NCBI RefSeq assembly: GCF_902459465.1
Contig: NC_047062.1
Location: forward strand, 26,040,001-26,104,000
Reading direction: 5' to 3'
DNA length: 64,000 bases
Source of the DNA: Asterias rubens
Taxonomy: Eukaryota
Below the pieces are notes generated by a model that was given only the letters and a program-made list of their open reading frames with translations, made no database searches and had not been told where the DNA came from. Both the position numbers and the translations under genes were made by a program. Below, one piece after another: positions 8,354 through 62,165 of this stretch (its first letter is position 1; each line of letters starts with the position of its first letter).

Positions 8354-9292
8354 GTCTGAAGTGTGACTTTTGACCTGTATACAGCTGAGGCTGCAATAAT
8401 CGACTGTAAATACATTGGGATTTTCATTCAAACATGGTTCTAAATAACATGTTGGATTAAAGGCAAGAATTATATTTGGTTTTTGAAACCGTTCGATAAA
8501 TTTCATCCTGTATTATATGACTGTATGATGGAAAATAACCCGGCGGACTCCCCTTCGGACTCGGACTCTAACTTAACACACGAGGGACTCGACTTAAACA
8601 TTGTCGTAAGGTTCAAAATGTTAATGCGCAAAAATGGGCCGGGTGTATTTAGCGATACTTGGGAAAATAAGAAAATTGCTAACTCGTATTTTCGGTCAAA
8701 CTTGAACCATTGAGCCTCATAGTTTTATCATACAAGCGGGCACATAGTGAGCATTGGACATGACTTGGATAAGTGGTTTGATGCATGTTACTTAGGGTAT
8801 TTGAAATTTTTGCCAGCTAAGAAGATTGGTTTGAAATAGTTTGATTTAGAAGTTATAGTTGTAAATTTTGTATTTTTAGATCAACACCATAATGCGTTTG
8901 TTCGTATTTGTCATGGAATATAGGTTTTTTTCGGCGACGTTACTTTAATTAGTCGCCGATACCGCGATACGAATTACGGAGAAGAGATATCAGTATAAAA
9001 CTAGATATAGTGTTTGTACAAACAAACACTAGGTGTTCGGCTATTGTTGGGTCAGTGTTTGAATAAATGAAACAAGTATTGTTAATAGCTCGTCAAATTA
9101 CAAAGAAATCAAAACCAAACAGTTTTCTCGATGTGTAATAATTTATAGAAAAAGCATCAAAAAGTTTACATTTCAACCTAAAAGCCTTTAAATACTGCCT
9201 TTTCAAAGCATTTTACAGGCTCTTCCAGTTTAAAAAGGTCAAAAAGTCAAGAAAAGGTCACCAACACACCCATTTTTGTGGAATACGTGAGG

Positions 9293-10595
9293 CCCTTTCA
9301 TATGATGTATAGATTGTCAAAATAGCTTTTGTGGTTGAGGAAACGTGAACTGATGAATAATGGCGACTGGAGAAGAGACTAACTAACCGGAAGGGAAATG
9401 TTTGTTGAAAACGCCTTGAAAACAGACTACGTACGTAAAGCCCTTTCATATGATGTAGATTGTCAAAATAGCTTTTGTGGTTGAGGGCATAGGAACTTAT
9501 GCATGATGACGACTGGAGAAGAGACTAACTGGAAGGGAAATGTTTGTTGAAAACGCCTTGAAAACAGACTACGTACGTAAAGCCCTTTCATATGATGTAT
9601 AGATTGTCAAAATAGCTTTTGTGGTTGAGGACATAGGAACTTATGCATAATGACGACTGGAGAAGAGACTAACTAACCGAATAGGAAATGTTTGTTGAAA
9701 ACATCTGAAAACAGACTACGTACGTAAAGCCCTTTCATATGATGTATAGATTGTCAAAATAGCTTTTGTGGTTGAGGACATAGGAACTTATGCATAATGA
9801 CGACTGGAGAAGAGACTAACTAACCGAATAGGAAATGTTTGTTGAAAACATCTGAAAACAGACTACGTACGTAAAGCCCTTTCATATGATGTATAGATTG
9901 TCAAAATAGCTTGTGTGGTTGAGGACATAGGAACTTATGCATAATGACGACTGGAGAAGAGACTAACTAACCGAAAGGGAAATGTTTGTTGAAAACACCT
10001 TGAAAACAGACTACGTACGTAAAGCCCTTTCATATGATGTATAGATTGTCAAAATAGCTTGTGTGGTTGAGGATATGGGAGCTTATGCATAATGACGACT
10101 GGAGAAGAACCTAACTAGGAGGAAAATCTTTGTTGAAAACGCCTTGAAAACAGACTACGTACGTAAAGCCCTTTCATATGATGTATAGATTGTCAAAATA
10201 GCTTTTGTGGTTGAGGACATAGGAACTTATGCATAATGACGACTGGAGAAGAGACTAACTAACCGAACAGGAAATGATTGTTGAAAACATCTGAAAACAG
10301 ACTACGTACGTAAAGCCCTTTCATATGATGTATAGATTGTCAAAATAGCTTGTGTGGTTGAGGACATAGGAACTTATGCATAATGACGACTGGAGAAGAG
10401 ACTAACTAACCGAAAAGGAAATGTTTGTTGAAAACACCTTGAAAACAGACTACGTACGTAAAGCCCTTTCATATGATGTATAGATTGTCAAAATAGCTTG
10501 TGTGGTTGAGGATATGGGAGCTTATGCATAATGACGACTGGAGAAGAAAATAACTAGGAGGAAAATCTTTGTTGAAAACGCCTTGAAAACAGACT
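9293..10595. repeat. ~147-bp subrepeat array in unit 1 (9 copies; 3, 3, 3 and 6 copies in units 2-5)
   Basis: ccctttcatatgatgta...gactacgtacgtaaag starts at 9293, 9441, 9583, 9730, 9877, 10025, 10169, 10316 and 10464. Confidence 0.95.
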
Positions 10596-10655
10596 AAAGC
10601 GAAGCTATTTATAGGAGAAAAAAAAATTAAATACAAAAATAAATCGTACAAATTT

Positions 10656-10749
10656 TGGTCGCCAAGTGGTCTCCCATCCAAATACTGACTGGGCTCGATT
10701 TTGCTTAACTTTAGTGACAGGTGTTATCAACGCAGTATGGTACGCAGCC
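10656..10749 (-). pseudogene. 5S rRNA-derived sequence, copy 1
   Basis: Minus strand reads ggctgcgtaccatactgcgttgataacacc-tgtcactaaagttaagcaaaatcgagcccagtcagtatttggatgggagaccacttggcgacca: 5S 5' end, box A-like AAGTTAAGC and box C TTGGATGGGAGACC, with ~12 nt missing internally and a truncated 3' end. Confidence 0.8.
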
Positions 10750-12327
10750 TAAAACGATCAACACGTGGTGCAGAGCGTGACCATGCTCATCAATGCACCG
10801 CATACTTACACGTGGTGACCGCAATGCACCGCATGCTTACACGTGGTGACAAAGTACATGTACATGTAATTGTAAAATCTTTACGCGCAATCAATGGGGG
10901 AATTTTGTAGTGCTTTATACGTGAATTTTAGATTTTTCAACATCGATTTTGAACCAGAAGACAAGATCAAAATGGGGTCATGTCTGTGAGGTGTTTACGG
11001 AGTTTTTAATGCCCTTTCCGATGATGTATTGATTGTCAAAATCCGTCATGCAGATCAAAAGTTATGATTTTTTAAAATAATACCGCATACTTACACGTGG
11101 TGACCGCAATGCACCGCATGCTTACACGTGGTGACAAAGTACATGTACATGTAATTGTAAAATCTTTACGCGCAATCAATGGGGGAATTTTGTAGTCTTT
11201 ATACATGAATTTTGAAATTTTCAACTTCTCTTTTGAGCCAGAAGACAAAATCAAAATGGGGTCATGTCTGTGAGGCGTTTACGGAGTTTTTAATGCCCTT
11301 TCAGATGATGTATTGATTGTAAAAATCCCTCATGTAGATCAAAAGTTATGATTTTTTGAAATAATAAACTTTGAGTTAGTGTATCTCGTCAACTGATGAC
11401 GTCATCGTGACGTAACAACTTTTGCATCATCTACTGGTTATTGTCTACCTGTGTGCAAAGTTTCAACTTAATGCAAGCTTCGCATCTATGTTTTTTCTTG
11501 CGGACAATCGACAGCGAGAAGAATGAGAAAAACCAAAAAAAAACTAGATATAGTGTTTGTACAAACAAACACTAGGTGTTCGGCTATTGTTGGGTCAATG
11601 TTTGAATAAATGAAACAAGTATTGTTAATATTGTCAAATTACAAAGAAATCAAAACCAAACAGTTTTCTCGATGTGTAATAATTTATAGAAAAAGCATCA
11701 AAAGTGTACATTTCAACCTAAAAGCCTTTAAATACTGCCTTTTCAAAGCATTTTACAGGCTCTTCCAGTTTAAAAAGGTCAAAAAGTCAAGAAAAGGTCA
11801 CCAACACACCCATTTTTGTGGAATACGTGAGGCCCTTTCATATGATGTATAGATTGTCAAAATAGCTTTTGTGGTTGAGGACATAGGAACTTATGCATAA
11901 TGACGACTGGAGAAGAGACTAACTAACCGAATAGGAAATGTTTGTTGAAAACATCTGAAAACAGACTACGTACGTAAAGCCCTTTCATATGATGTATAGA
12001 TTGTCAAAATAGCTTGTGTGGTTGAGGATATAGGAACTTACGCATAATGACGACTGGAGAAGAGACTAACTAACCAAAAAAAGGAAATGTTTGTAGAAAA
12101 CACCTTGAAAACAGACTACGTACGTAAAGCCCTTTCATATGATGTATAGATTGTCAAAATAGCTTGTGTGGTTGAGGATATGAGAGCTTATGCATAACGA
12201 CGACTGGAGAAGAGACTAACTAGGAGGAAAATCTTTGTTGAAAACGCCTTGAAAACAGACTAAAGCGAAGCTATTTATAGGAGAAAAAAAAATTAAAAAT
12301 TAATACAAAAATAAATCGTACAAATTT

Positions 12328-12421
12328 TGGTCGCCAAGTGGTCTCCCATCCAAATACTGACTGGGCTCGATTTTGCTTAACTTTAGTGACAGGTGTTATC
12401 AACGCAGTATGGTACGCAGAC
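12328..12421 (-). pseudogene. 5S rRNA-derived sequence, copy 2
   Basis: Same cassette as 10656-10749, in unit 2. Confidence 0.8.
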
Positions 12422-14005
12422 TAAAACGATCAACACGTGGTGCAGAGCGTGACCATGCTCCTCAATGCACCGCATACTTACACGTGGTGACCGCAATGCA
12501 CCGCATGCTTACACGTGGTGACAAAGTACATGTACATGTAATTGTAAAATCTTTACGCGCAATCAATGGGGGAATTTTGTAGTGCTTTATACGTGAATTT
12601 TAGATTTTTCAACATCGATTTTGAACCAGAAGACAAGATCAAAATGGGGTCATGTCTGTGAGGTGTTTACGGAGTTTTTAATGCCTTTTCCGATGATGTA
12701 TTGATTGTCAAAATCCGTCATGCAGATCAAAAGTTATGATTTTTTGAAATAATACCGCATACTTACACGTGGTGACCGCAATGCACCGCGTGCTTACACG
12801 TGGTGACAAAGTACATGTACATGTAATTGTAAAATCTTTACGCGCAATCAATGGGGGAATTTTGTAGTCTTTATACAGTGTACATGAATTTTGAAATTTT
12901 CAACCTCGATTTTGAACCGGAAGACAAGATCAAAATGGGGTCATGTCTGTGAGGTGTTTACGGAGTTTTTAATGCCCTTTCCGATGATGTATTGATTGTA
13001 AAAATCCTTCATGCAGATCAAAAGTTATGATTTTTTGAAATAATAAACTTTGAATGAGTGTATCTCGTCAACTGATGACGTCATCGTGACGTAAGAACTT
13101 TTGCATCATCTACTGGTTATTGTCTACCTGTGTGCAAAGTTTCAACGTAATGCAAGCTTCGCATCTATTTTTTTTCTTGCGGACAATCGACAGCGAGAAG
13201 AATGAGAAAAACCAAAAAAAAACTAGATATAGTGTTTGTACAAACAAACACTAGGTGTTCGGCTATTGTTGGGTCAATGTTTGAATAAATGAAACAAGTA
13301 TTGTTAATATTGTCAAATTACAAAGAAATCAAAACCAAACAGTTTTCTCGATGTGTAATAATTTATAGAAAAAGCATCAAAAGTGTACATTTCAACCTAA
13401 AAGCCTTTAAATACTGCCTTTTCAAAGCATTTTACAGGCTCTTCCAGTTTAAAAAGGTCAAAAAGTCAAGAAAAGGTCACCAACACACCCATTTTTGTGG
13501 AATACGTGAGGCCCTTTCATATGATGTATAGATTGTCAAAATAGCTTTTGTGGTTGAGGACATAGGAACTTATGCATAATGACGACTGGAGAAGAGACTA
13601 ACTAACCGAATAGGAAATGTTTGTTGAAAACATCTGAAAACAGACTACGTACGTAAAGCCCTTTCATATGATGTATAGATTGTCAAAATAGCTTGTGTGG
13701 TTGAGGATATAGGAACTTACGCATAATGACGACTGGAGAAGAGACTAACTAACCAAAAAAAGGAAATGTTTGTAGAAAACACCTTGAAAACAGACTACGT
13801 ACGTAAAGCCCTTTCATATGATGTATAGATTGTCAAAATAGCTTGTGTGGTTGAGGATATGAGAGCTTATGCATAACGACGACTGGAGAAGAGACTAACT
13901 AGGAGGAAAATCTTTGTTGAAAACGCCTTGAAAACAGACTAAAGCGAAGCTATTTATAGGAGAAAAAAAATTAAAAATTAATACAAAAATAAATCGTACA
14001 AATTT

Positions 14006-14099
14006 TGGTCGCCAAGTGGTCTCCCATCCAAATACTGACTGGGCTCGATTTTGCTTAACTTTAGTGACAGGTGTTATCAACGCAGTATGGTACGCAGAC
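14006..14099 (-). pseudogene. 5S rRNA-derived sequence, copy 3
   Basis: Same cassette, in unit 3. Confidence 0.8.
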
Positions 14100-15690
14100 T
14101 AAAACGATCAACACGTGGTGCAGAGCGTGACCATGCTCCTCAATGCACCGCATACTTACACGTGGTGACCGCAATGCACCGCATGCTTACACGTGGTGAC
14201 AAAGTACATGTACATGTAAGTGTAAAATCTTTACGCGCAATCAATGGGGGAATTTTGTAGTGCTTTATACGTGAATTTTAGATTTTTCAACATCGATTTT
14301 GAACCAGAAGACAAGATCAAAATGGGGTCATGTCTGTGAGGTGTTTACGGAGTTTTTAATGCCCTTTCCGATGATGTATTGATTGTCAAAATCCGTCATG
14401 CAGATCAAAAGTTATGATTTTTTGAAATAATACCGCATACTTACACGTGGTGACCGCAATGCACCGCGTGCTTACACGTGGTGACAAAGTACATGTACAT
14501 GTAATTGTAAAATCTTTACGCGCAATCAATGGGGGAATTTTGTAGTCTTTATACAGTGTACATGAATTTTGAAATTTTCAACCTCGATTTTGAACCGGAA
14601 GACAAGATCAAAATGGGGTCATGTCTGTGAGGTGTTTACGGAGTTTTTAATGCCCTTTCCGATGATGTATTGATTGTAAAAATCCTTCATGCAGATCAAA
14701 AGTTATGATTTTTTGAAATAATAAACTTTGAATGAGTGTATCTCGTCAACTGATGACGTCATCGTGACGTAAGAACTTTTGCATCATCTACTGGTTATTG
14801 TCTACCTGTGTGCAAAGTTTCAACTTAATGCAAGCTTCGCATCTATGCTTTTTCTTGCGGACAATCGACAGCGAGAAGAATAAGAAAAACCAAAAAAAAA
14901 AAAAAACTAGATATAGTGTTTGTACAAACAAACACTAGGTGTTCGGCTATTGTTGGGTCAGTGTTTGAATAAATGAAACAAGTATTGTTAATATTGTCAA
15001 ATTACAAAGAAATCAAAACCAAACAGTTTTCTCGATGTGTAATAATTTTTAGAAAAAGCATCAAAAGTGTACATTTCAACCTAAAAGCCTTTAAATACTG
15101 CCTTTTCAAAGCATTTTACAGGCTCTTCCAGTTTAAAAAGGTCAAAAAGTCAAGAAAAGGTCACCAACACACCCATTTTTGTGGAATACGTGAGGCCCTT
15201 TCATATGATGTATAGATTGTCAAAATAGCTTTTGTGGTTGAGGACATAGGAACTTATGCATAATGACGACTGGAGAAGAGACTAACTAACCGAATAGGAA
15301 ATGTTTGTTGAAAACATCTGAAAACAGACTACGTACGTAAAGCCCTTTCATATGATGTATAGATTGTCAAAATAGCTTGTGTGGTTGAGGATATAGGAAC
15401 TTACGCATAATGACGACTGGAGAAGAGACTAACTAACCAAAAAAAGGAAATGTTTGTAGAAAACACCTTGAAAACAGACTACGTACGTAAAGCCCTTTCA
15501 TATGATGTATAGATTGTCAAAATAGCTTGTGTGGTTGAGGATATGAGAGCTTATGCATAACGACGACTGGAGAAGAGACTAACTAGGAGGAAAATCTTTG
15601 TTGAAAACGCCTTGAAAACAGACTAAAGCGAAGCTATTTATAGGAGAAAAAAAAATTAAAAATTAATACAAAAATAAATCGTACAAATTT

Positions 15691-15784
15691 TGGTCGCCAA
15701 GTGGTCTCCCATCCAAATACTGACTGGGCTCGATTTTGCTTAACTTTAGTGACAGGTGTTATCAACGCAGTATGGTACGCAGAC
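15691..15784 (-). pseudogene. 5S rRNA-derived sequence, copy 4
   Basis: Same cassette, in unit 4. Confidence 0.8.
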
Positions 15785-17793
15785 TAAAACGATCAACACG
15801 TGGTGCAGAGCGTGACCATGCTCCTCAATGCACCGCATACTTACACGTGGTGACTGCAATGCACCGCATGCTTACACGTGGTGACAAAGTACATGTACAT
15901 GTAATTGTAAAATCTTTACGCGCAATCAATGGGGGAATTTTGTAGTGCTTTATACGTGAATTTTAGATTTTTCAACATCGATTTTGAACCAAAAGACAAG
16001 ATCAAAATGGGGTCATGTCTGTGAGGTGTTTACGGAGTTTTTAATGCCCTTTCCGATGATGTATTGATTGTCAAAATCCGTCATGCAGATCAAAAGTTAT
16101 GATTTTTTGAAATAATACCGCATACTTACACGTGGTGACCGCAATGCACCGCATGCTTACACGTGGTGACAAAGTACATGTACATGTAATTGTAAAATCT
16201 TTACGCGCAATCAATGGGGGAATTTTGTAGTCTTTATACATGAATTTTGAAATTTTCAACTTCTCTTTTGAGCCGGAAGACAAAATCAAAATGGGGTCAT
16301 GTCTGTGAAGCGTTTACGGAGTTTTTAATGCCCTTTCAGATGATGTATTGATTGTAAAAATCCCTCATGTAGATCAAAAGTTATGATTTTTTGAAATAAT
16401 AAACTTTGAGTTAGTGTATCTCGTCAACTGATGACGTCATCGTGACGTAACAACTTTTGCATCATCTACTGGTTATTGTCTACCTGTGTGCAAAGTTTCA
16501 ACTTAATGCAAGCTTCGCATCTATGCTTTTTCTTGCGGACAATCGACAGCGAGAAGAATAAGAAAAACCAAAAAAAAACTAGATATAGTGTTTGTACGAA
16601 CAAACACTAGGTGTTCGGCTATTGTTGGGTCAGTGTTTGAATAAATGAAACAAGTATTGTTAATATTGTCAAATTACAAAGAAATCAAAACCAAACAGTT
16701 TTCTCGATGTGTAATAATTTATAGAAAAAGCATCAAAAGTGTACATTTCAACCTAAAAGCCTTTAAATACTGCCTTTTCAAAGCATTTTACAGGCTCTTC
16801 CAGTTTAAAAAAGGCAAAAAGTCAAGAAAAGGTCACCAACACACCCATTTTTGTGGAATACGTGAGGCCCTTTCATATGATGTATAGATTGTCAAAATAG
16901 CTTTTGTGGTTGAGGAAACGTGAACTGATGAATAATGGCGACTGGAGAAGAGCCTAACTAACCAGAAGGGAAATGTTTGTTGAAAACGCCTTGAAAACAG
17001 ACTACGTACGTAAAGCTCTTTCATATGATGTATAGATTGTCAAAATAGCTTTTGTGGTTGAGGACATAGGAACTTATGCATAATCACGACTGAAGAAGAG
17101 ACTAACTAACCGAATAGGAAATGTTTGTTGAAAACATCTGAAAACAGACTACGTACGTAAAGCCCTTTCATATGATGTATAGATTGTCAAAATAGCTTGT
17201 GTGGTTGAGGATATAGGAACTTATGCATAATGACGACTGGAGAAGAGACTAACTAACCGAAAGGGAAATGTTTGTTGAAAACACCTTGAAAACAGACTAC
17301 GTACGTAAAGCCCTTTCATATGATGTATAGATTGTCAAAATAGCTTGTGTGGTTGAGGATATGGGAGCTTATGCATAATGACGACTGGAGAAGAGCCTAA
17401 CTAGGAGGAAAATCTTTGTTGAAAACGCCTTGAAAACAGACTACGTACGTAAAGCCCTTTCATATGATGTATAGATTGTCAAAATAGCATTTGTGGTTGA
17501 GGACATAGGAACTTATGCATAATGACGACTGGAGAAGAGACTAACTAACCGAAAAGGAAATGTTTGTTGAAAACACCTTGAAAACAGACTACGTACGTAA
17601 AGCCCTTTCATATGATGTATAGATTGTCAAAATAGCTTGTGTGGTTGAGGATATGGGAGCTTATGCATAATTACGACTGGAGAAGAGACTAACTAGGAGG
17701 AAAATCTTTGTTGAAAACGCCTTGAAAACAGACTAAAGCGAAGCTATTTATAGGAGAAAAAAAATTAAATACAAAAATAAATCGTACAAATTT

Positions 17794-17887
17794 TGGTCGC
17801 CAAGTGGTCTCCCATCCAAATACTGACTGGGCTCGATTTTGCTTAACTTTAGTGACAGGTGTTATCAACGCAGTATGGTACGTAGAC
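17794..17887 (-). pseudogene. 5S rRNA-derived sequence, copy 5
   Basis: Same cassette, in unit 5; its 5' end GTCTACGTACCATAC is the closest to a canonical 5S start. Confidence 0.8.
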
Positions 17888-18698
17888 TAAAACGATCAAC
17901 ACGTGGTGCAGAGCGTGACTATGCTCATCAATGCACCGCATACTTACACGTGGTGACCGCAATGCACCGCATGCTTACACGTGGTGACAAAGTACATGTA
18001 CATGTAATTGTAAAATCTTTACGCGCAATCAATGGGGGAATTTTGTAGTGCTTTATACGTGAATTTTAGATTTTTCAACATCGATTTTGAACCAGAAGAC
18101 AAGATCAAAATGGGGTCATGTCTGTGAGGTGTTTACGGAGTTTTTAATGCCCTTTCCGATGATGTATTGATTGTCAAAATCCGTCATGCAGATCAAAAGT
18201 TATGATTTTTTGAAATAATACCGCATACTTACACGTGGTGACCGCAATGCACCGCATGCTTACACGTGGTGACAAAGTACATGTACATGTAATTGTAAAA
18301 TCTTTACGCGCAATCAATGGGGGAATTTTGCAGTCTTTATACAGTGTACATGAATTTTGAAATTTTCAACCTCGATTTTGAACCGGAAGACAAGATCAAA
18401 ATGGGGTCATGTCTGTGAGGTGTTTACGGAGTTTTTAATGCCCTTTCCGATGATGTATTGATTGTAAAAATCCTTCATGCAGATCAAAAGTTATGATTTT
18501 TTGAAATAATAAACTTTGAATTAGTGTATCTCATCAACTGATGACGTCATCGTGACGTAAGAACTTTTGTATCATCTACTGGTTATTGTCTACCCGTGTG
18601 CAAAGTTTCAACTTAATGCAAGCTTCGCATCTATGCTTTTTCTTGCGGACAATCGACAGCGAGAAGAATAAGAAAAACCAAAAAAAAAAAAAAAAAAA

Positions 18699-19663
18699 CC
18701 GAACAAAATCAATGAGTTGTTCGGGCTGTTGCCCGAACACCTAAAAAAAAAAAAAAAAAAAAACACCGAACAAAATCAATGAGTTGTTCGGGCTGTTGCC
18801 CGAACACCTAAAAAACCGAACAAAATCAATGAGTTGTTCGGGCTGTTGCCCGAACACCTAACAAAAAAAAAAAAAACCGAACAAAATCAATGAGTTGTTC
18901 GGGCTGATGCCCGAACACCTAAAAAAAAAAAAAAAAAACCGAACAAAATCAATGAGTTGTTCGGGCTGTTGCCCGAACACCTAAAAAAAAAAAAAAAAAA
19001 ACGAACAAAATCAATGAGTTGTTCGGGCTTTTGCCCGAACACCTAAAAAAAAAAAAAAAAAAAAAACCGAACAAAATCAATGAGTTGTTCGGGCTGTTGC
19101 CCGAACACCTAAAAAAAAAAAAAACGAACAAAATCAATGAGTTGTTCGGGCTGTTGCCCGAACACCTAAAAAACCGAACAAAATCAATGAGTTGTTCGGG
19201 CTGTTGCCCGAACACCTAAAAAAAAAAAAAAACGAACAAAATCAATGAGTTGTTCGGGCTGTTGCCCGAACACCTAAAAAAAAAAACCGAACAAAATCAA
19301 TGAGTTGTTCGGGCTGTTGCCCGAACACCTAAAAAAAAAAAAAAACGAACAAAAACAATGAGTTGTTCGGGCTGTTGCCCGAACACCTAAAAAAAACCGA
19401 ACAAAATCAATGAGTTGTTCGGGCTGTTGCCCGAACACCTAAAAAGAAAAACCGAACAAAATCAATGAGTTGTTCGGGCTGTTGCCCGAACACCTAAAAA
19501 AAAAAAACCGAACAAAATCAATGAGTTGTTCGGGCTGTTGCCCGAACACCTAAAAAAAAACGAACAAAATCAATGAGTTGTTCGGGCTGTTGCCCGAACA
19601 CCTAAAAAAAAAAAAAAAACCGAACAAAATCAATGAGTTGTTCGGGCTGTTGCCCGAACACCT
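18699..19663. repeat. 17 copies of a 44-bp double-hairpin module separated by variable poly(A) tracts
   Basis: ccgaacaaaatcaatgagttgttcgggctgttgcccgaacacct repeated 17 times with A-rich spacers of about 6-23 nt. Confidence 0.95.
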
Positions 19664-19750
19664 AATGAAAGATACAGAAATTTAAACAAACAATATTGCG
19701 TGTGCACCGTCGTGTTGAAACCATGGAGCATTGTCAGGTGACGTGAACCC

Positions 19751-19760
19751 GGGAATTCCC
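19751..19760 (+). promoter_or_regulatory. NF-kappaB consensus site GGGAATTCCC upstream of ISG12 gene 1 (duplicate at 24776-24785 for gene 2)
   Basis: Perfect palindromic GGGRNWYYCC match ~320 bp before the ATG, in a CpG-rich promoter-like stretch. Confidence 0.5.
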
Positions 19761-20079
19761 TACAAAGATTATTTTCGGTAAACGCGCATCTGTCGAGCGC
19801 AATCTGTGTTAGTTGACGTTTTTTGAAATTTACGCACGGTAATTTTATTACATGCAAACGCGAATACAAATCGCGCGCGCCCGCGCAAAATCAAAACAAT
19901 ATTGGCATTTTCGAAGATTGCGCCAATAGCTGGCGGGCGCAGCCATAAATAAGTTCATGCATTTAACGCAAACGTTATCGCATTTTAGCATGGGATGACA
20001 CGTACGCTTAACTCCAGCAGGCAAATGTCATATTATTATTGACCACTGTGAAACATAAGGTACCTGAGTTAAGATCATC

Positions 20080-22762
20080 ATGTGGTGGGTAGAGAAACTT
20101 GAATCTGCAAACAAGCTCATACTTTTTCAAAATAACCGTCCAGTCCGAAATGAACATGATGTTTTAATTTTCATCGTGGCTGTCAGTGCATTGCAAGAGG
20201 ATGAAACTGGAAGAACTATAACGGTAGGTAAATACTATAGTATTATTTTTACTAGCCCCATAAATCGGTCCAATCCATGCCACAAGGCTACGGAGTGGAT
20301 TGGACCGATTTATGCACAAGGCTACGGGACCGATTTATGGGGCTAGGTATAATACATGAACCTCAAAACATTTCTTTAATTTTAAATAAATGATGGTCTT
20401 TGACTTCTGGGCCTTTGTGCATGTTCCGAGTTTATCTTTTGCACCACAATGTATATTGATGTTTGTGCAATAAAAAGAATAACGACTTCAGGCTACACTC
20501 AATTCTGTCCAAATCAAATTAGTAAATGTTCAAAGTTGTCTAGTTGCGATAACGTAACCCTCCTACCTATAGCGAGGGTTACGTTATCGCAACTAAAAGT
20601 TGTCCTGCTAATCATCTGTCTCCTCAGGTCAGTTTTGAAAACGGGTCGAGCCTACAGCTATCCCTGGATGATTTCAGTCAAAGAGACACCAGTTTGAAGG
20701 CAGATTTGAAGGCAATAAACTTTGTCAAGCAGTTTGCTAAGGAGTTTTCGGGCCAGTTACCAGCAGAAGAACAACCTAAAACTAAAAAAAGCGGTAAGCT
20801 TTTAAGTTTTATCCTATATCCAATTTCATTTGATAAAATTTCATTGTCACAACCAATGAATATTATGCCATATTCTGCATGAAACCTGTTTTTTTTTCTC
20901 AAATGTACTGAGGATCAAACTGTTTGATTGAGTATATCCCTGGTAATTTCTTGTCTGAACTGAAGAACTAAAGAAGGCTTGGACTTGAAACCTAATTTTG
21001 GTTCAACAATTCACAAGCTTTAAAACCTGATTATGGTTAGACCAGGTACTGAGATTTTAAACCTGCTTAGTTATCTTTTAATTCTAAGTAAAACTTTCAT
21101 CGTATACAACATGTAACCCTTTAGTGATCAAAAAGAAACATTGTACATTCCAGGGCCTTTTTGGCAGGCATGATAGTACTACACTTATCATTATGTAAAT
21201 TTGTTAATTTCATCTTCAATTCAAAAATTAGTTATAAAAGTAACGGCTGAATAGGTTTTAAAGATGTGCCCTTTTCTTCATATCAAACTTTGCTAAAAAT
21301 TAAACAGCACACTTTCCATGAACGAAGATAATTTATAAGATTTGTTGTTTTCATGAGTTTTTGGGATGCGAGGTGGCAGCAGACTTACCAGGTATATCTA
21401 TTGTTCTTTGTAATGTGAGCATTCTCAGATATGCGTAAACAATGAAAATTTACCTGGTAGGTCTGCTCTGCTGCCACCTAGTGCCCCAGAGTATCCCCCA
21501 TCCCTGAGTTGTGTACAAATTGTACCTGCACTCGCAGAGTCCAGGCTCTGTGGCTGTTTTGTGTGATGCCTATTACATGGTTGTAGTGGTTGTATTATTT
21601 TTATATTTTAGGCTATGGTGTGCGACATGTTGTAGCAGGGTGTGTTGTCGGAGTAGGTGCTGTTGCTGCAGCTCCATTTGTACTCACTGCTGTAGGATTT
21701 ACATCAGGTGGAATAGCAGCAGGATCCATTGCATCAGGCATGATGTCTTCTGCAGCAATTGCAAATGGTGGCGCTGTTGCAGCAGGAAGTGGAGTGGCTG
21801 TTCTGCAGTCAGTTGGAGCTGCAGGGTTAGGAGCTGCAGGTACTGCTGCAGTTGGTGGTGCTGGTGCAGCAGCTGGGGCTGGTGCTTCTGGTGTAGCAGG
21901 TTTCTTTCAGAATTACTTTAGAGGTAGGGTCATAGATTGGTTTTTGTCTGTCGAATCCATGTGATTGAGTACGCAATACAAATTTTGACGTTACAAATTC
22001 GCAGCGAATAATTCCCAACAGTTGAACTGTGTTCAACTCCTGCAAAACATTCGCTGGAAAATAGCCATGTGACGTCAAAATTTGTATTGTTTTCACATTT
22101 GCAGGAAGACATCCACATGAAAACATACTGATTAAAAATATTCAAGGCAGAGGACACTGTTGGTAATTACTCAAAATAATTTTTAGCATAAAACATACTT
22201 GGTAACAAGCAATGGAGAGCTGTTGATAGTATAAAACATTGTGAGAAACGGCTCCCTCTGAAGTATCATAGTTTTTGAGAAAGAAGTAATTTTCCACGAA
22301 TTTGACTTCAAGACCTCAGATTTAGGTTTTGAAGTCTCAGAATCAAGCATCTGGAAGCACACAACTAGTGTGACAAGGGTGTTTTTTCTTTCATTATTAT
22401 CGCGCAACATCGACGACCAATTGAGCTCAAACTTTCACAGGTTTGTTATTTTATGCATAGTTGAGAATACACCAAGTGAGAAGAATGGTCTTCGACAATT
22501 ACTAACCTGTATACCGCAGTTGAAACTAATTAACAGTGAGTTTTTAATATTTCTCCATAATTTCTCTCACAGATCCATTTCTTATTCTTTTCTTCTAGGA
22601 CGTGGAGACTCTACAACCGAGAACAAGACCTCCAATACAACACAGGAGGATGATGATTATGATAATAATGGTGATGGGGAAGATGGGGATGGGTGGGTAT
22701 TGGGGGAGGGGGGAGAGGGTATGGGGGGTTATGGTTATGATTGGGATGATGATAATGATTAG
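20080..22762 (+). CDS. IFI27-like: ISG12/IFI27-family protein 1 (exons 20080-20223, 20628-20793, 21612-21923, 22599-22762; 261 aa)
   Basis: Exon 3 encodes the ISG12 motif (VGFTSGGIAAGSIASGMMSSAAIANGGAVAAGSGVAVLQSVGAAG). All junctions are GT-AG with compatible phases 0/1/1, the total of 786 nt is in frame, and exons 1-2 are homologous to those of genes 4 and 5. Confidence 0.85.
20541..20595. repeat. Short ~55-bp hairpin interspersed element (relatives at about 24578, 25566, 29606, 34166 and 35122)
   Basis: 22-bp perfect stem tagttgcgataacgtaaccctc / gagggttacgttatcgcaacta. Confidence 0.7.
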
Positions 22763-25104
22763 ATAAAGATTGGATGGGGGGGGGGGGCGCTGATTGAGAT
22801 GATAATGATGATAATAATTGGCACCTGTAAATGGGTTGATCTTATAGTTATAAAATTACCCTAACCCTAACCCGCAGATTGTATCTAAAAGTACATCGAT
22901 CAGTTGTTATTTATGTGCACGACAACAAAATTAAGGACATTAGACTAAGTATCCCTCAATTGCATTAAAGACAATTGTTGGCAATAACCTTTGTCCGAAC
23001 GAAAAACCTATCCAGTCAAAAGATTCAACGAGTACTACATTTAATCTTTCAGAGGTTTATTTTACAATAAGGTCTCACATCAAAATCAATTGAATTGTGA
23101 GGTAGTGATGTATAACAACCGAAACAGTCACCTTTTGGTTGGCAGCTCTCCCTTCCTGCCTTGCATGTTAATATAGCCACAGTACAATGGAGGCTAAATA
23201 AAGATCTTTAATTCAATAGCAATTAGGCCTATTTTAAAACCCACCGGCTTTATGAAGAGTATTTTATCATTTTTTATTTGTTTAAGTTGTGCAAATGCGA
23301 GGTCCTACACGGGAAGTGACTTTAATTAAACGGTATGTGTTTCATGTAATGATATTAGATGACAGAGTTCCAATTGAGTACTGCTTATTGTACACTATCA
23401 TGATTGTATCTTGACAAGGTCCACACTGATGAAAAATCAGCAGAATTTTTCTGTCTGTGATTTGATGTAAGTGTAATACTAATAGAGAAAATTATCATTA
23501 TATCTGCAGTCAGCAAACAAGCTTGAGTAATAGGTATAATTTGACCCTCAATCTTATTATTTTGTTGTTTGCTGTTATTGAAAATAATAAAATAAGCCAC
23601 TTTTCTGTTAATAGTCATATAACGTGTTATAATTTTTGTTGAGAAAAATAAAAAGAAAAATGAAAAAGGTTATTTGAAGTCAAGTTATTATAAATAATAA
23701 ACATGTCTCCTTACCTTTAGTCACTTTGTGTCTTAGTATGGCGTGAAGTGTTAATCTTTCCGACACCTGAAAGAAAATTACAAACACTTAACAAGTGTTT
23801 CTGATAGTATCCTAACACTTCATGTGCTACTGAATGCTAGCAGACGACACTATTCTCAACGTTATTAGTTAAAACTATTTGTTGCCCTCTAGAGGGCTCT
23901 GTTGTACACAATTACAAAACCGGCTGGGTGTGTACTGCAGGCATAATATAGGTCGTTTAGCTCCCCCCCTGGGTCCACCCCGGTGTGTGGCGTGTTTTTT
24001 TTCCAGGACCAACGTGTGCAGATAATTACCCACGTTCGTCATGGAAAAAAAAACCGCCACACACCGGGGTTGACCCAGGGAAGCTAAACGAACGCAGTTA
24101 CTAATGTTACGCCAACTTCTGCGATTTTTGGGGGTTTCCCCATATACAGCGAACGTTTTTGTAATAAAGTGACTCATTTATTTGGTCGTTATTCAAGATG
24201 CTAAAACGAGTATGCAAACACGGTATCTCTGTGGCTCATAAACATCAGAAATGGTGTTTTATCATGGGTCAAAGAGACACCAGTTTAAAGTCGATAAACA
24301 TTGCCAAGCAGTTTGCTAAGGAGTTTTCGGGTCAGTTACCGGAAGAACCTGGGGCTCGGTTACCGGAAGAACCTAAAAGAGGTAAGCTTTTAAGTTTTAT
24401 CCTGTTATTATATCATTGGACAAATTTCATTGTCATAACCAATGAATGTTATTGTTATGCCAGAATCTGCATGAAACCTGTTTTTTCTGTAATGTACTGA
24501 TCGAGGATCAAACTGTTTCAAGTACGGTATATCCCTGGAATGTTTTTGTCCGAACTGAAGTTAAGACGTGAACTGTGATAGTTGCGATAACATAACCCTC
24601 CCCCGACGGCTTTGAAAGCAGAACGAAACTCATAGAGTAGTAGTACTAGTACTACACCCTTCTTTTTAGAAGCCCGGAATCAGACATAAATGAAAGATAC
24701 AGAAATTTAAACAAACAATATTGCGTGTGCACCGTCGTGTTGAAACCATGGAGCATTGTCAGGTGACGTGAACCCGGGAATTCCCTACAAAGATTATTTT
24801 CGGTAAACGCGCATCTGTCGAGCGCAATCTGTGTTAGTTGACGTTTTTTGAAATTTACGCACGGTAATTTTATTACATGCAAACACGAATACAAATCGCG
24901 CGCGCCCGCGCAAAATCAAAACAATATTGGCATTTTCGAAGATTGCGCCAATAGCTGGCGGGCGCAGCCATAAATAAGTTCATGCATTTAACGCAAACGT
25001 TATCGCAATTTAGCATGGGATGACACGTACGCTTAACTCCAGCAGGCAAAGGTCATATTATTATTGACCACTGTGAAACATAAGGTACCTGAGTTAAGAT
25101 CATC

Positions 25105-27793
25105 ATGTGGTGGGTAGAGAAACTTGAATCTGCAAACAAGCTCATACTTTTTCAAAATAACCGTCCAGTCCGAAATGAACATGATGTTTTAATTTTCATC
25201 GTGGCTGTCAGTGCATTGCAAGAGGATGAAACTGGAAGAAATATAACGGTAGGTAAATACTATAGTATTATTTTTACTAGCCCCATAAATCGGTCCAATC
25301 CATGCCACAAGGCTACGGAGTGGATTGGACCGATTTATGCACAAGGCTACGGGACCGATTTATGGGGCTAGGTATAATACATGAACCTCAAAACATTTCT
25401 TTAATTTTAAATAAATGATGGTCTTTGACTTCTGGGCCTTTGTGCATGTTCCGAGTTTATCTTTTGCACCACAATGTATATTGATGTTTGTGCAATAAAA
25501 AGAATAACGACTTCAGGCTACACTCAATTCTGTCCAAATCAAATTAGTAAATGTTCAAAGTTGTCTAGTTGCGATAACGTAACCCTCCTACCTATAGCGA
25601 GGGTTACGTTATCGCAACTAAAAGTTGTCCTGCTAATCATCTGTCTCCTCAGGTCAGTTTTGAAAACGGGTCGAGCCTACAGCTATCCCTGGATGATTTC
25701 AGTCAAAGAGACACCAGTTTGAAGGCAGATTTGAAGGCAATAAACTTTGTCAAGCAGTTTGCTAAGGAGTTTTCGGGCCAGTTACCAGCAGAAGAACAAC
25801 CTAAAACTAAAAAAAGCGGTAAGCTTTTAAGTTTTATCCTATATCCAATTTCATTTGATAAAATTTCATTGTCACAACCAATGAATATTATGCCATATTC
25901 TGCATGAAACCTGTTTTTTTTTCTCAAATGTACTGAGGATCAAACTGTTTGATTGAGTATATCCCTGGTAATTTCTTGTCTGAACTGAAGAACTAAAGAA
26001 GGCTTGGACTTGAAACCTAATTTTGGTTCAACAATTCACAAGCTTTAAAACCTGATTATGGTTAGACCAGGTACTGAGATTTTAAACCTGCTTAGTTATC
26101 TTTTAATTCTAAGTAAAACTTTCATCGTATACAACATGTAACCCTTTAGTGATCAAAAAGAAACATTGTACATTCCAGGGCCTTTTTGGCAGGCATGATA
26201 GTACTACACTTATCATTATGTAAATTTGTTAATTTCATCTTCAATTCAAAAATTAGTTATAAAAGTAACGGCTGAATAGGTTTTAAAGATGTGCCCTTTT
26301 CTTCATATCAAACTTTGCTAAAAATTAAACAGCACACTTTCCATGAACGAAGATAATTTATAAGATTTGTTGTTTTCATGAGGAGTTTTTGGGATGCGAG
26401 GTGGCAGCAGACTTACCAGGTATATCTATTGTTCTCTGTAATGTGAGCATTCTCAGATATGCGTAAACAATGAAAATTTACCTGGTAGGTCTGCTCTGCT
26501 GCCACCTAGTGCCCCAGAGTATCCCCCATCCCTGAGTTGTGTACAAATTGTACCTGCACTCGCAGAGTCCAGGCTCTGTGGCTGTTTTGTGTGATGCCTA
26601 TTACATGGTTGTAGTGGTTGTATTATTTTTATATTTTAGGCTATGGTGTGCGACATGTTGTAGCAGGGTGTGTTGTCGGAGTAGGTGCTGTTGCTGCAGC
26701 TCCATTTGTACTCACTGCTGTAGGATTTACATCAGGTGGAATAGCAGCAGGATCCATTGCATCAGGCATGATGTCTTCTGCAGCAATTGCAAATGGTGGC
26801 GCTGTTGCAGCAGGAAGTGGAGTGGCTGTTCTGCAGTCAGTTGGAGCTGCAGGGTTAGGAGCTGCAGGTACTGCTGCAGTTGGTGGTGCTGGTGCAGCAG
26901 CTGGGGCTGGTGCTTCTGGTGTAGCAGGTTTCTTTCAGAATTACTTTAGAGGTAGGGTCATAGATTGGTTATTGTCTGTCGAATCCATGTGATTGAGTAC
27001 GCAATACAAATTTTGACGTTACAAATTCGCAGCGAATAATTCCCAACAGTTGAACTGTGTTCAACTCCTGCAAAACATTCGCTGGAAAATAGCCATGTGA
27101 CGTCAAAATTTGTATTGTTTTCACATTTGCAGGAAGACATCCACATGAAAACATACTGATTAAAAATATTCAAGGCAGAGGACACTGTTGGTAATTACTC
27201 AAAATAAATTTTAGCATAAAACATACTTGGTAACAAGCAATGGAGAGCTGTTGATAGTATAAAACATTGTGAGAAACGGCTCCCTCTGAAGTATCATAGT
27301 TTTTGAGAAAGAAGTAATTTTCCACGAATTTGACTTCAAGACCTCAGATTTAGGTTTTGAAGTCTCAGAATCAAGCATCTGGAAGCACACAACTAGTGTG
27401 ACAAGGGTGTTTTTTCTTTCATTATTATCGCGCAACATCGACGACCAATTGAGCTCAAACTTTCACAGGTTTGTTATTTTATGCATAGTTGAGAATACAC
27501 CAAGTGAGAAGAATGGTCTTCGACAATTACTAACCTGTATACCGCAGTTGAAACTAATTAACAGTGAGTTTTTAATATTTCTCCATAATTTCTCTCACAG
27601 ATCCATTTCTTATTCTTTTCTTCTAGGACGTGGAGACTCTACAACCGAGAACAAGACCTCCAATACAACACAGGAGGATGATGATTATGATAATAATGGT
27701 GATGGGGAAGATGGGGATGGGTGGGTATTGGGGGAGGGGGAGAGGGTATGGGGGGTTATGGTTATGATTGGGATGATGATAATGATTAGATAA
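25105..27793 (+). CDS. IFI27-like: ISG12/IFI27-family protein 2 (exons 25105-25248, 25653-25818, 26640-26951, 27627-27793); tail shifted by a 1-G deletion
   Basis: Duplicate of gene 1. A G6 run is G5 near 27736-27740, changing the C-terminus to ...GEGERVWGVMVMIGMMIMIR*. Confidence 0.8.
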
Positions 27794-29158
27794 AGATTGG
27801 ATGGGGGGGGGGGGGCGCTGATTGAGATGATAATGATGATAATAATTGGCACCTGTAAATGGGTTGATCTTATAGTTATAAAATTACCCTAACCCTAACC
27901 CGCAGATTGTATCTAAAAGTACATCGATCAGTTGTTATTTATGTGCACGACAACAAAATTAAGGACATTAGACTAAGTATCCCTCAATTGCATTAAAGAC
28001 AATTGTTGGCAATAACCTTTGTCCGAACGAAAAACCTATCCAGTCAAAAGATTCAACGAGTACTACATTTAATCTTTCAGAGGTTTATTTTACAATAAGG
28101 TCTCACATCAAAATCAATTGAATTGTGAGGTAGTGATGTATAACAACCGAAACAGTCACCTTTTGGTTGGCAGCTCTCCCTTCCTGCCTTGCATGTTAAT
28201 ATAGCCACAGTACAATGGAGGCTAAATAAAGATCTTTAATTCAATAGCAATTAGGCCTATTTTAAAACCCACCGGCTTTATGAAGAGTATTTTATCTTTT
28301 TTTATTTGTTTAAGTTGTGCAAATGCGAGGTCCTACACGGGAAGTGACTTTAATTAAACGGTATGTGTTTCATGTAATGATATTAGATGACAGAGTTCCA
28401 ATTGAGTACTGCTTATTGTACACTATCATGATTGTATCTTGACAAGGTCCACACTGATGAAAAATCAGCAGAATTTTTCTGTCTGTGATTTGATGTAAGT
28501 GTAATACTAATAGAGAAAATTATCATTATATCTGCAGTCAGCAAACAAGCTTGAGTAATAGGTATAATTTGACCCTCAATCTTATTATTTTGTTGTTTGC
28601 TGTTATTGAAAATAATAAAATAAGCCACTTTTCTGTTAATAGTCATATAACGTGTTATAATTTTTGTTGAGAAAAATAAAAAGAAAAATGAAAAAGGTTA
28701 TTTGAAGTCAAGTTATTATAAATAATAAACATGTCTCCTTACCTTTAGTCACTTTGTGTCTTAGTATGGCGTGAAGTGTTAATCTTTCCGACACCTGAAA
28801 GAAAATTACAAACACTTAACAAGTGTTTCTGATAGTACCCTAACACTTCATGTGCTACTGAATGCTAGCAGACGACACTATTCTCAACGTTATTAGTTAA
28901 AACTATTTGTTGCCCTCTAGAGGGCTCTGTTGTACACAATTACAAAACCGGCTGGGTGTGTACTGCAGGCATAATATAGGTCGTTTAGCTCCCCCCCTGG
29001 GTCCACCCCGGTGTGTGGCGTGTTTTTTTTCCAGGACCAACGTGTGCAGATAATTACCCACGTTCGTCATGGAAAAAAAAACCGCCACACACCGGGGTTG
29101 ACCCAGGGAAGCTAAACGAACGCAGTTACTAATGTTACGCCAACTTCTGCGATTTTTG

Positions 29159-29168
29159 GGGGTTTCCC
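29159..29168 (+). promoter_or_regulatory. NF-kappaB consensus site GGGGTTTCCC upstream of the gene 3 chimeric exon (duplicate at 24131-24140)
   Basis: GGGRNWYYCC match ending 57 nt before the ATG at 29226. Confidence 0.35.
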
Positions 29169-29225
29169 CATATACAGCGAACGTTTTTGTAATAAAGTGA
29201 CTCGTTTATTTGGTCGTTATTCAAG

Positions 29226-61925: not shown

Positions 61926-62165
61926 CTTCAATACAATGTTTGTAATACGCACAGGAAAGTATGTTTTGCTTTGCTGTCCTGGTATGTCTGTCTGTCTGTC
62001 TGTCGGTCATGCTGTCTGTCTGGCTGTCACGCTGTCTGTCTGCGGTTGGTCTGACATTACAAGGTAGACATTGTGTGGTGATTTTTTAGGTAAACAATAC
62101 CGCTTTAAATAAATCTAAATTATGTTATTTGGCTTCGTTAAAGCTTCTTGGAAATATAAACCAGG

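What the first reader, a model, noticed from the sequence alone, without database searches (positions are those of the whole stretch)
9001..19664. 10.7-kb hierarchical concatemer with Helentron/Helitron2-like asymmetric termini
Seen: read on the minus strand, the element starts T|TAGGTGTTCGG with an adjacent hairpin and ends with the inverted motif CCGAACACCTA, a 10-bp-stem hairpin and TATCTAG|T. Five bodies (2543, 1679, 1684, 1672 and ~2100 bp) are joined head to tail, each 3' CTAG abutting the T-tract of the next unit. Known: asymmetric/subterminal inverted repeats, a 3' stem-loop and T-rich targets characterise Helentron/Helitron2 non-autonomous elements, and rolling-circle elements can seed satellites. 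Inference: this is a rolling-circle concatemer in which the internal units lack the 5' module.
Basis: partly seen in the sequence, partly recalled or inferred. Interest (0 to 1): 0.72.

Follow-up and report, generated by a model that had tools for sequence, protein, structure and literature searches.

The report
Nested stack of non-autonomous Helentrons
The 10.7-kb block that looks like a head-to-tail concatemer is a pile-up of copies of one young, non-coding rolling-circle transposon (a HINE), most of them apparently inserted separately into the T-run of a copy already there; it is an ordinary member of a known kind with an instructive architecture.

Summary
On the minus strand, window 19664->9001 carries 17 tandem 45-nt 5' modules, each followed by a T-run. 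Five bodies follow (2120, 1672, 1684, 1679 and 2543 bp). Each body ends in the inverted 11-mer, a 10-bp-stem hairpin and TATCTAG, and abuts the T-run of the next body.

The family is real and dispersed. The genome holds at least 198 5' modules and 195 3' ends, against 0 for reversed-pattern controls. All 20 loci I read are flanked T|...|T without target duplication, and monomers exist. Layout and target match HINEs, the non-autonomous Helentrons. Helentron proteins (Rep, PIF1 helicase, AP-endonuclease, OTU) are encoded in this genome, but no autonomous partner with these ends was found.

The "rolling-circle concatemer" reading is not supported. The five bodies are not each other's closest kin: b1 differs by 2 bases from a copy on another contig and by 14-27 from its neighbours, and the AU test rejects one clade (p 1e-82). 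Only b3 and b4 are sisters.

A heterologous case with a paralogous empty site shows insertion into the T-run behind a 5' module. Split-length T-runs fit the same process.

Serial self-nesting plus some local duplication is the best reading. The unit number is not confirmed by long reads.

The parts
18699..19664 (-). Array of 17 5' terminal modules (45 nt each: 11-nt TIR TAGGTGTTCGG, a complementary inverted repeat forming a 9-bp hairpin, and a second alternative 8-bp hairpin), separated by pure T-runs of 5-22 nt. The outermost module is 19620-19664.
16579..18698 (-). Body b1 (innermost, next to the 5' modules; 2120 bp including T19GG; 6 copies of the 147-bp repeat). It ends in the subTIR, hairpin and TATCTAG. 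Its nearest relative is on another contig (L017_b1: 2 mismatches in about 1200 non-satellite columns).
14907..16578 (-). Body b2 (1672 bp; T9GG start; 2.7 copies of the 147-bp repeat). It is unresolved at the base of the clade that holds all five window bodies.
13223..14906 (-). Body b3 (1684 bp; T15GG start). It is sister to b4 and equally close to L001_b1 on C1 at 4.74 Mb.
11544..13222 (-). Body b4 (1679 bp; T9GG start). It is sister to b3, the only within-array sister pair.
9001..11543 (-). Body b5 (outermost, 2543 bp; 9 copies of the 147-bp repeat). It has the longest private branch.
9001..9040 (-). 3' terminus of the whole block: subTIR CCGAACACCTA (9030-9040), hairpin with 10-bp stem and 4-nt loop (9008-9031), then TATCTAG. 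The flank begins with T.
9284..10596 (.). Central 147-bp tandem repeat of b5 (9 copies). The homologous arrays are at 11824-12222, 13503-13901, 15187-15585 and 16859-17735.
10797..11366 (.). Two-copy 284-291-bp internal duplication present in every body. The others are at 12469-13045, 14147-14723, 15832-16401 and 17935-18511.
19665..29688 (.). Flanking 5.0-kb direct duplication (19665-24660 and 24690-29688, 99.7% identical) with a 29-bp filler. Its left edge coincides with the element's 5' terminus. Any link to the element is unproven.

Best explanation
The block is a composite of copies of one young family of non-autonomous Helentron-type rolling-circle transposons (HINEs).

Inferred from the family's known biology, not shown here: a Helentron Rep-helicase-endonuclease supplied in trans nicks at T|TAGG of a 5' module. 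It peels the strand off towards the 3' end and stops at the subTIR, hairpin and CTAG signal. It then integrates the copy between two Ts.

Every copy carries a T-run of about 20-30 nt directly behind its 5' module, so resident copies are good targets. A new copy landing in that run leaves the resident's 5' module upstream and the resident's body downstream. Repeated landings therefore give [5' modules]n followed by [body-CTAG-T-run]m, which looks like a concatemer whose inner units lack the 5' module.

Donors that already carry several 5' modules may add further modules. One local duplication (b3/b4) and slippage or unequal exchange within the short-unit module array probably added further copies. 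The innermost body (b1) would be the youngest layer and b5 the oldest.
For: Family identity:
- Both ends occur about 200 times each genome-wide, against 0 for the controls.
- All 20 loci are flanked T|...|T with no TSD. Monomers with one module and one body exist: L002, L003, L005, L007, L008.
- The hairpins fold well beyond shuffled sequence.
- The genome encodes Rep + PIF1 + Exo_endo_phos + OTU proteins, including a 1919-aa open frame.
- The layout matches published HINEs (PMC7492417, PMC4067079).

Serial insertion rather than one template:
- b1 is 99.7% identical over 2123 bp to L017_b1 on contig C10, but about 95% to b5.
- In about 1200 non-satellite columns, b1 has 2 mismatches to L017_b1 against 14-27 to its array neighbours. 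b3 has 5 to L001_b1 against 6 to b4.
- The tree needs 4 changes for the five bodies, and the AU test rejects one clade at p 1.25e-82.
- Bodies of the arrays in L013, L015, L016 and L018 are also not sisters.

The mechanism seen directly:
- In L017, a family-1 composite sits inside the T-run behind the 5' module of a related family-2 element.
- L035:3958-4220 is the uninterrupted paralogue (219/220 identical on the right side), with no TSD.
- Four such heterologous module-T-run-module joints exist genome-wide.

Split T-runs: the intact run has a median of 21 nt, runs between modules 11 nt, and runs after an internal CTAG 14 nt (Mann-Whitney p 1e-6 and 5e-4).

Private branch lengths rise from b1 (0) to b5 (0.0056).
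Against: - Module joints within a family are far commoner than the 4 heterologous joints, although family 2 has at least 356 modules. Random nesting alone therefore does not explain 17 modules for 5 bodies.
- b3/b4 are sisters, so at least one step may be a local duplication.
- On C3 at 12.34-12.37 Mb, about 10 3' ends follow 3 modules. That is more bodies than simple nesting gives, and I could not read this locus.
- Only 27 bodies went into the tree, of more than 400 first-look candidates.
- Dispersed copies could in principle have been copied from this array, which fits b1 but not the inner bodies.
- No autonomous element sharing these termini was found.
- The array's unit number is not confirmed by long reads.
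Confidence: 0.62

Rival explanations
1. A single rolling-circle event copied one circular or unterminated template many times, and the concatemer was integrated. The inner units lack the 5' module because the template had lost it.
For: Helitron arrays ascribed to aberrant rolling-circle replication are described in plants, as summarised in PMC12628747. The units here are in one orientation and joined exactly at CTAG. The multiple 5' ends resemble the 'many 5', one 3'' arrays reported there.
Against: Units from one template must be each other's closest kin. They are not (AU p 1.25e-82). The units differ by up to 2.2% in non-satellite columns, and in repeat number (2.7, 6 or 9 copies), while near-identical copies sit on other contigs. 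There are five 3' ends, not one.
Confidence: 0.04
2. The array grew purely in place. Unequal exchange or replication slippage between the T-runs that flank the 5' module and the body gave the first duplicates. Homologous unequal crossing-over then expanded both arrays. Gene conversion with dispersed copies blurred the kinship.
For: All junctions lie in T-runs. b3/b4 are sisters. The 55-62-nt module array shows an alternating GTTCGG/GTTCGT pattern and a 163-nt higher-order period, typical of unequal exchange. Same-family joints greatly outnumber heterologous ones.
Against: It does not explain b1 being 2 mismatches from a copy on C10 and 14-27 from its neighbours over the whole non-satellite alignment; conversion tracts of 1-2 kb would be needed. 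It cannot give the heterologous joints. The 5' flank offers only one T for the founding exchange. It does not predict shortened T-runs.
Confidence: 0.2
3. The pile-up is serial insertion, but of truncated units. The transposase sometimes nicks inside the T-run instead of at the 5' end. This mobilises body-only units, and module-only units by the converse error, which then land in T-runs of resident copies.
For: It would explain unequal numbers of modules and bodies (17 against 5 here; about 3 against 10 on C3). It would also explain several 3' ends on C1, C11, C15 and C21 with no well-conserved module listed nearby. It is compatible with the polyphyly and the split T-runs.
Against: No body-only copy with a non-HINE 5' flank was actually read. 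The module lists are incomplete (100 of 198 shown), so 'no module nearby' is not established. The full-copy nested insertion is the one variant directly observed.
Confidence: 0.1
4. The arrangement is partly an assembly artefact. Reads from different family copies were chained, so the unit number or order is wrong.
For: The family copies are 97-100% identical. Short-read contigs break inside the array. An exact 5-kb duplication lies next to it.
Against: The same architecture recurs at many loci on many contigs. The units carry distinguishing differences and repeat numbers. The flank/module junction is seen in two independent metagenome runs. The 10.7-kb block is within the usual length of long reads (general knowledge; not checked for this assembly).
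Confidence: 0.04

Closest known systems
HINEs: DINE-1 of Drosophila, HINE-Mo of mites, Cg_HINE and pearl elements of bivalves, Tsp of sea urchin (PMC4067079, PMC7492417)
   Same: 11-13-nt (sub)terminal inverted repeats. An inverted repeat next to the 5' one. A simple-sequence tract behind it. Central tandem repeats of about 150 bp. A 3' palindrome a few bases from the end. Insertion at TT in T-rich DNA without TSD. No coding capacity. Copy number far above that of Helentron genes.
   Different: The simple tract is a long homopolymer T-run plus a short G-run, not a 3-8-nt microsatellite. The 5' repeat is terminal rather than 2-4 nt inside. The 3' subTIR ends 29 nt from the end, against the 38-60 nt quoted for mites. 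Multi-module and multi-body composites are the rule here rather than the exception. No sequence relationship to published families was tested.
   Same: Asymmetric terminal repeats, a 3' hairpin and a T-rich target. More tandem arrays are reported from Helitron2 than from Helitron1 families.
   Different: The Xenopus arrays are internal 166-bp minisatellites. Here whole bodies of 1.7-2.5 kb are stacked. Helitron2 and Helentron cannot be told apart without the partner protein.
Tandem arrays of truncated Helitrons ascribed to aberrant rolling-circle replication (Xiong, Dooner and Du 2016, as summarised in PMC12628747)
   Same: One-orientation arrays of partial elements with several copies of one terminus.
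   Different: Those arrays have many 5' ends and one 3' end and are taken to come from one template. Here there are five complete 3' ends, and the units belong to different sublineages.
TE dimers and arrays formed by double insertion at a preferred target (McGurk and Barbash 2018, PMC5932611)
   Same: Independent insertions at a preferred site give tandem-looking structures. These can then expand by unequal exchange.
   Different: There the second copy lands in the duplicated target beside the first, giving head-to-tail full copies. Here the preferred target lies inside the element, behind its 5' module. The termini are therefore sorted into a block of 5' modules and a block of bodies.

Membership tests
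HINE (non-autonomous Helentron) | 11-15-nt (sub)terminal inverted repeats at both ends | tested here: met
   TAGGTGTTCGG lies at the 5' end. Its complement CCGAACACCTA lies 30-40 nt from the 3' end. Both are conserved in about 200 copies.
HINE (non-autonomous Helentron) | Inverted repeat complementary to the 5' subTIR, forming a hairpin | tested here: met
   9-bp hairpin, -13 kcal/mol, z -5.8, 0 of 200 shuffles as good.
HINE (non-autonomous Helentron) | Palindrome or stem-loop close to the 3' terminus | tested here: met
   10-bp stem, 4-nt loop, 7 nt from the end, z -4.8.
HINE (non-autonomous Helentron) | Insertion between T and T, T-rich target, no target-site duplication | tested here: met
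   All 20 loci are flanked T|...|T with no shared flank repeat. A paralogous empty site was found for L017 in L035.
HINE (non-autonomous Helentron) | Simple-sequence tract in the left part and central tandem repeats | tested here: met
   T-run plus G-run behind the module. A 147-bp repeat of 2.7-9 copies, found only within family loci among the scored matches.
HINE (non-autonomous Helentron) | Autonomous Helentron in the same genome sharing the termini | tested here: inconclusive
   The genome has 13 Helitron_like_N matches. Open frames carry Rep + PIF1 + Exo_endo_phos + OTU. In the five 30-kb stretches read, no copy was bounded by these termini, and the copies are too diverged to define ends.
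Canonical Helitron (Helitron1) | 5' TC, 3' CTRR, no terminal inverted repeats, insertion between A and T | tested here: not met
   The 3' CTAG fits CTRR. However, the 5' end is TAGG, inverted repeats are present, and the target is T|T.
Cut-and-paste TIR transposon / MITE | Symmetrical terminal inverted repeats and a fixed-length target-site duplication | tested here: not met
   The 3' repeat is subterminal, followed by a hairpin and 7 nt. No TSD was seen at 20 loci or at the empty site.
Rolling-circle concatemer of one template | Units are each other's closest relatives (one origin) | tested here: not met
   The tree needs 4 changes. AU p 1.25e-82 against one clade. b1 is 2 mismatches from a copy on C10 and 14-27 from its neighbours.
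Tandem structure by repeated insertion at a preferred target | Units of independent origin; target sequence split at the junctions; the same joint seen between unrelated elements | tested here: met
   Polyphyly. Shortened T-runs at the junctions. Heterologous nesting with an empty-site paralogue and four such joints genome-wide.

The most novel reading that the evidence does not exclude
The architecture may be a direct product of the transposase rather than of chance nesting. In this reading, the Rep nicks both at the 5' end and within the T-run. That would create module-only and body-only units, and it would make the element's own T-run a built-in landing pad that turns a transposon into a growing satellite.

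The neighbouring 5.0-kb duplication could be a footprint of the 3'-OH left by the Rep nick priming a template switch. Its breakpoint lies within one base of the element's 5' terminus, and a 29-bp filler separates the two copies. If so, this would be rare sequence-level evidence of Helentron initiation chemistry in an animal genome.
Probability: 0.12. Interest if true: 0.6.

Novelty: new member of a known kind. Interest (0 to 1): 0.36.

Why it matters
Helentron-derived elements are a major carrier of satellite-like repeats in molluscs and insects, and how they become arrays is debated. This locus shows a simple route that needs no special replication step. An element whose preferred target (a T-run) lies inside itself will stack copies, and the stack sorts into a block of 5' ends and a block of bodies that imitates a concatemer.

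For annotation, such blocks should not be read as rolling-circle multimers without checking the kinship of the units. The family is very young (copies 97-100% identical) and the genome keeps long open Helentron frames. The system may therefore still be active and could be tested experimentally.

Tried and rejected
1. Autonomous partner. I read 30 kb around five Rep loci on C2, C6, C92 and C15 (two loci) and scanned for the two 11-mers with up to 1 mismatch. The only hits belonged to neighbouring non-autonomous copies of related families, in inconsistent orientation. An inverted 11-mer search between upstream and downstream regions gave chance-level pairs. Copy-to-copy comparison and genome searches with the regions flanking the open frames did not define ends, because copies are about 70% identical.

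2. Empty site for the window's own insertion. The left flank has one 96% paralogue, at C1:26105388-26105787, just outside the window. The right flank's only paralogue is the adjacent duplicate at 24690. The two do not abut anywhere, so no empty site was found for this locus. The L017/L035 pair served instead.

4. Long-read confirmation. All 24 runs are kept as short contigs, and these break inside the array.

5. Assigning blocks of 5' modules to particular bodies from module variants. The modules are almost invariant, so this was not informative.

6. Rfam. The only match is a weak 5S-like one, below the gathering score.

7. The organism's name is coded in the run table. The genome size and contig pattern reminded me of a starfish assembly, but this was not tested.


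Full report
**What is there**

I read the element on the minus strand. It runs from window 19664 to 9001.

It begins with 17 tandem copies of a 45-nt module (18699-19664). Each module starts TAGGTGTTCGG and is followed by a pure T-run of 5-22 nt. The module folds into a 9-bp hairpin (-13 kcal/mol, z -5.8). By direct reading it can also form a second, mutually exclusive 8-bp hairpin.

Behind the last module come five bodies. In element order I call them:
- b1: 16579-18698
- b2: 14907-16578
- b3: 13223-14906
- b4: 11544-13222
- b5: 9001-11543

Each body starts with a T-run and GGTTTTTC. Each ends with CCGAACACCTA, a hairpin with a 10-bp stem and 4-nt loop, and TATCTAG. Every body holds a 147-bp tandem repeat (6, 2.7, 2.7, 2.7 and 9 copies from b1 to b5) and a two-copy 284-291-bp duplication. 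One addition is needed: the 5' module itself is amplified 17-fold.

**The family**

The window is C1:26040001-26104000 of a 417.6-Mb assembly. With up to 3 mismatches the 5' module occurs 198 times and the 40-nt 3' end 195 times, on many contigs. The reversed control patterns give no match. A search with the 3' 280 bp gave 424 first-look candidates, and the 40 scored are 97-100% identical. The family is therefore young.

I fetched 20 loci. All are flanked by T on both sides with no target duplication, often in T-rich or (TTA)n DNA. Five are simple monomers with one module and one body. Twelve have two to six modules. Eight have two or more 3' ends within the stretch read, and five more run on from their last 3' end into the start of a further body. 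The internal junctions are those of the window, CTAG|T-run-GGTTTTTC, or variants of it.

**Classification**

The layout is that of HINEs, the non-autonomous derivatives of Helentrons, as described for Drosophila DINE-1, mites and the Pacific oyster (PMC4067079, PMC7492417). The shared features are:
- terminal/subterminal 11-mers;
- a complementary repeat beside the 5' one;
- a simple tract;
- central repeats of about 150 bp;
- a 3' palindrome;
- a TT target with no TSD.

The genome has 13 matches to the Helitron Rep domain. The open frames I scanned combine Rep, PIF1 helicase and an AP-type endonuclease, with an OTU protease domain in the same or the upstream open frame. That is the Helentron gene set. 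One uninterrupted frame is 1919 aa long.

I could not tie any of these genes to the present termini. The partner remains unknown, as was also the case for the oyster elements.

**Why it is not a concatemer**

Units copied from one template should be each other's nearest relatives. I cut out 36 bodies from the window and the 20 loci. For 27 of them I aligned the non-satellite parts (about 1200 columns) and built a tree.

The five window bodies need four changes on the tree. The best tree that keeps them together is 137 log-likelihood units worse (AU p 1.25e-82).
- b1 is sister to L017_b1 on contig C10. It has 2 mismatches to that copy against 14-27 to its neighbours, and is 99.7% identical to it over the whole 2123 bp.
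- b3 and b4 are sisters, but L001_b1 (C1 at 4.74 Mb) is as close to b3 as b4 is (5 against 6 mismatches).
- b2 and b5 are nearest to L008_b1.

The arrays in L013, L015, L016 and L018 show the same pattern. The stack therefore samples the family's sublineages.

**How the stack forms**

Locus L017 shows the process between two different families. A related family-2 element has the same 11-mer but a different module, with at least 356 modules genome-wide, often in tandem. In L017 it is interrupted inside the T-run behind its 5' module by a 4.3-kb family-1 composite.

An uninterrupted family-2 copy, L035:3958-4220, matches both sides (54/56 and 219/220). It shows that nothing was duplicated or lost.

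The result reads: module(2), T-run, module(1), body(1), CTAG, ..., CTAG, T-run, body(2). With two copies of one family, the same event gives two modules in tandem followed by two bodies, the second without a module. That is exactly what the window shows.

Exact-pattern searches find four such heterologous joints in the genome.

T-run lengths fit a split target. The intact run behind the innermost module has a median of 21 nt. Runs between modules have a median of 11 nt, and runs after an internal CTAG 14 nt (p 1e-6 and 5e-4). In the window, private branch lengths rise from b1 (0) to b5 (0.0056). This is what is expected if inner layers are younger, but with n = 5 it is only suggestive.

**What nesting does not explain**

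Seventeen modules for five bodies needs donors that already carry several modules. Such copies are common. They would arise if transposition starts at an outer module of a stack and stops at the first 3' end. Alternatively, the 55-62-nt units grew by slippage or unequal exchange, and the array does show an alternating variant pattern and a 163-nt higher-order period.

Same-family module joints far outnumber the heterologous ones. Copying of composites or local growth must therefore contribute. The b3/b4 pair may be a local duplication. A cluster on C3 has about ten 3' ends behind three modules, and I could not read it.

A variant in which the transposase sometimes nicks inside the T-run, mobilising body-only units, is not excluded.

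**Reliability of the assembly**

All public runs holding the flank are kept as short contigs. Two marine-metagenome runs have contigs that cross from the right flank 28 nt into the outermost module. That junction therefore exists outside the assembled individual, but the interior cannot be checked.

**Comparison and verdict**

This is a new member of a known kind. The closest relatives in organisation are DINE-1 and Cg_HINE-type elements.

Arrays of truncated Helitrons have been ascribed to aberrant rolling-circle replication, with many 5' ends and one 3' end. TE tandems formed by double insertion at preferred targets are known from Drosophila. The present block works like the latter. Its one particular feature is that the target lies inside the element, which sorts the ends into two blocks.

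Interest is moderate to low. The family is ordinary, but the case is a clean warning against reading such blocks as concatemers. The family also looks recent enough for experiments.

This scan had noted the 17-module array and a 5S-like piece on this same stretch before.

Noticed in passing
window 19665-24660, 24661-24689, 24690-29688: A 5.0-kb direct duplication (99.7% identical) with a unique 29-bp filler between the copies. The left edge of the first copy coincides, to within one base, with the 5' terminus of the element. The unit's first 400 bp occur only at these two places in the genome. The cause is unknown. One idea is a template switch primed from the nick at the element's 5' end. An assembly artefact is not excluded.
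   Followed up: partly
window 17781-17883 (minus strand), with equivalent positions in each body, e.g. about 10656-10750: Each body carries a 5S rRNA-like piece. Rfam scores it 25.7 bits (E 0.095), below the gathering score of 38, and only one of the five copies reached the listing threshold.
   Followed up: partly
L035:2100-8300 and L030:8600-9540; genome-wide: A second HINE family has the same 11-nt terminal repeat but a different 43-nt module and a 3' end CTATGTCTAG. It has at least 356 modules, often 2-7 in tandem, and also several 3' ends per locus. A third module type (TAGGTGTTCGT...) lies beside it on C15. The stacked architecture is therefore a trait of this whole Helentron group.
   Followed up: partly
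L038:446-9467 (minus strand), L039:552-9570, L036:2001-8569: Long open Helentron frames carry Rep, DUF6570, PIF1 helicase and AP-endonuclease. An OTU protease domain and a Herpes_teg_N-like domain lie upstream of the Rep domain, in a separate open frame (L038) or split between that frame and the Rep frame (L039). Eight of the 13 Rep matches lie on C15 between 12.4 and 14.0 Mb, a Helentron-rich stretch.
   Followed up: partly
L016, L018, L019, L020: A subfamily carries an internal degenerate 3' end (CTAT instead of CTAG). It is followed by a 606-608-bp partial body and a proper CTAG. The same composite sits at four loci, so a stack with a disabled inner terminator appears to move as one unit.
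   Followed up: partly
L017 (element orientation) 2658-2690: One internal junction reads CTAG|TGTTCG-T23. The join lies inside the last TTTT of a 5' module rather than in the T-run, so the short T-stretch within the module can also serve as a target.
   Followed up: no
L005, L008, L012, L016, L018 flanks: Several copies sit in (TTA)n/(ATT)n microsatellites, which suggests a favoured T|T context beyond plain T-runs.
   Followed up: no
window 5696-7201 versus 61491-64000, and C1:26105388-26105787: The left flank of the block has an 83-96% paralogue about 56 kb downstream that runs off the window's end. The region is a set of older segmental duplications.
   Followed up: no
L009 and L010 (C24 at 210 kb and 594 kb): Two family copies share an identical 5' flank but lie in opposite orientation on a 0.83-Mb contig. 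This is a segmental (inverted) duplication carrying the element, not two insertions.
   Followed up: no
window 37588-38342 and 51413-53162: Two unrelated tandem arrays: a 78-bp unit x 9.7 copies at 97% match, and a 106-bp unit x 16.5 copies at 96% match. Neither was examined.
   Followed up: no
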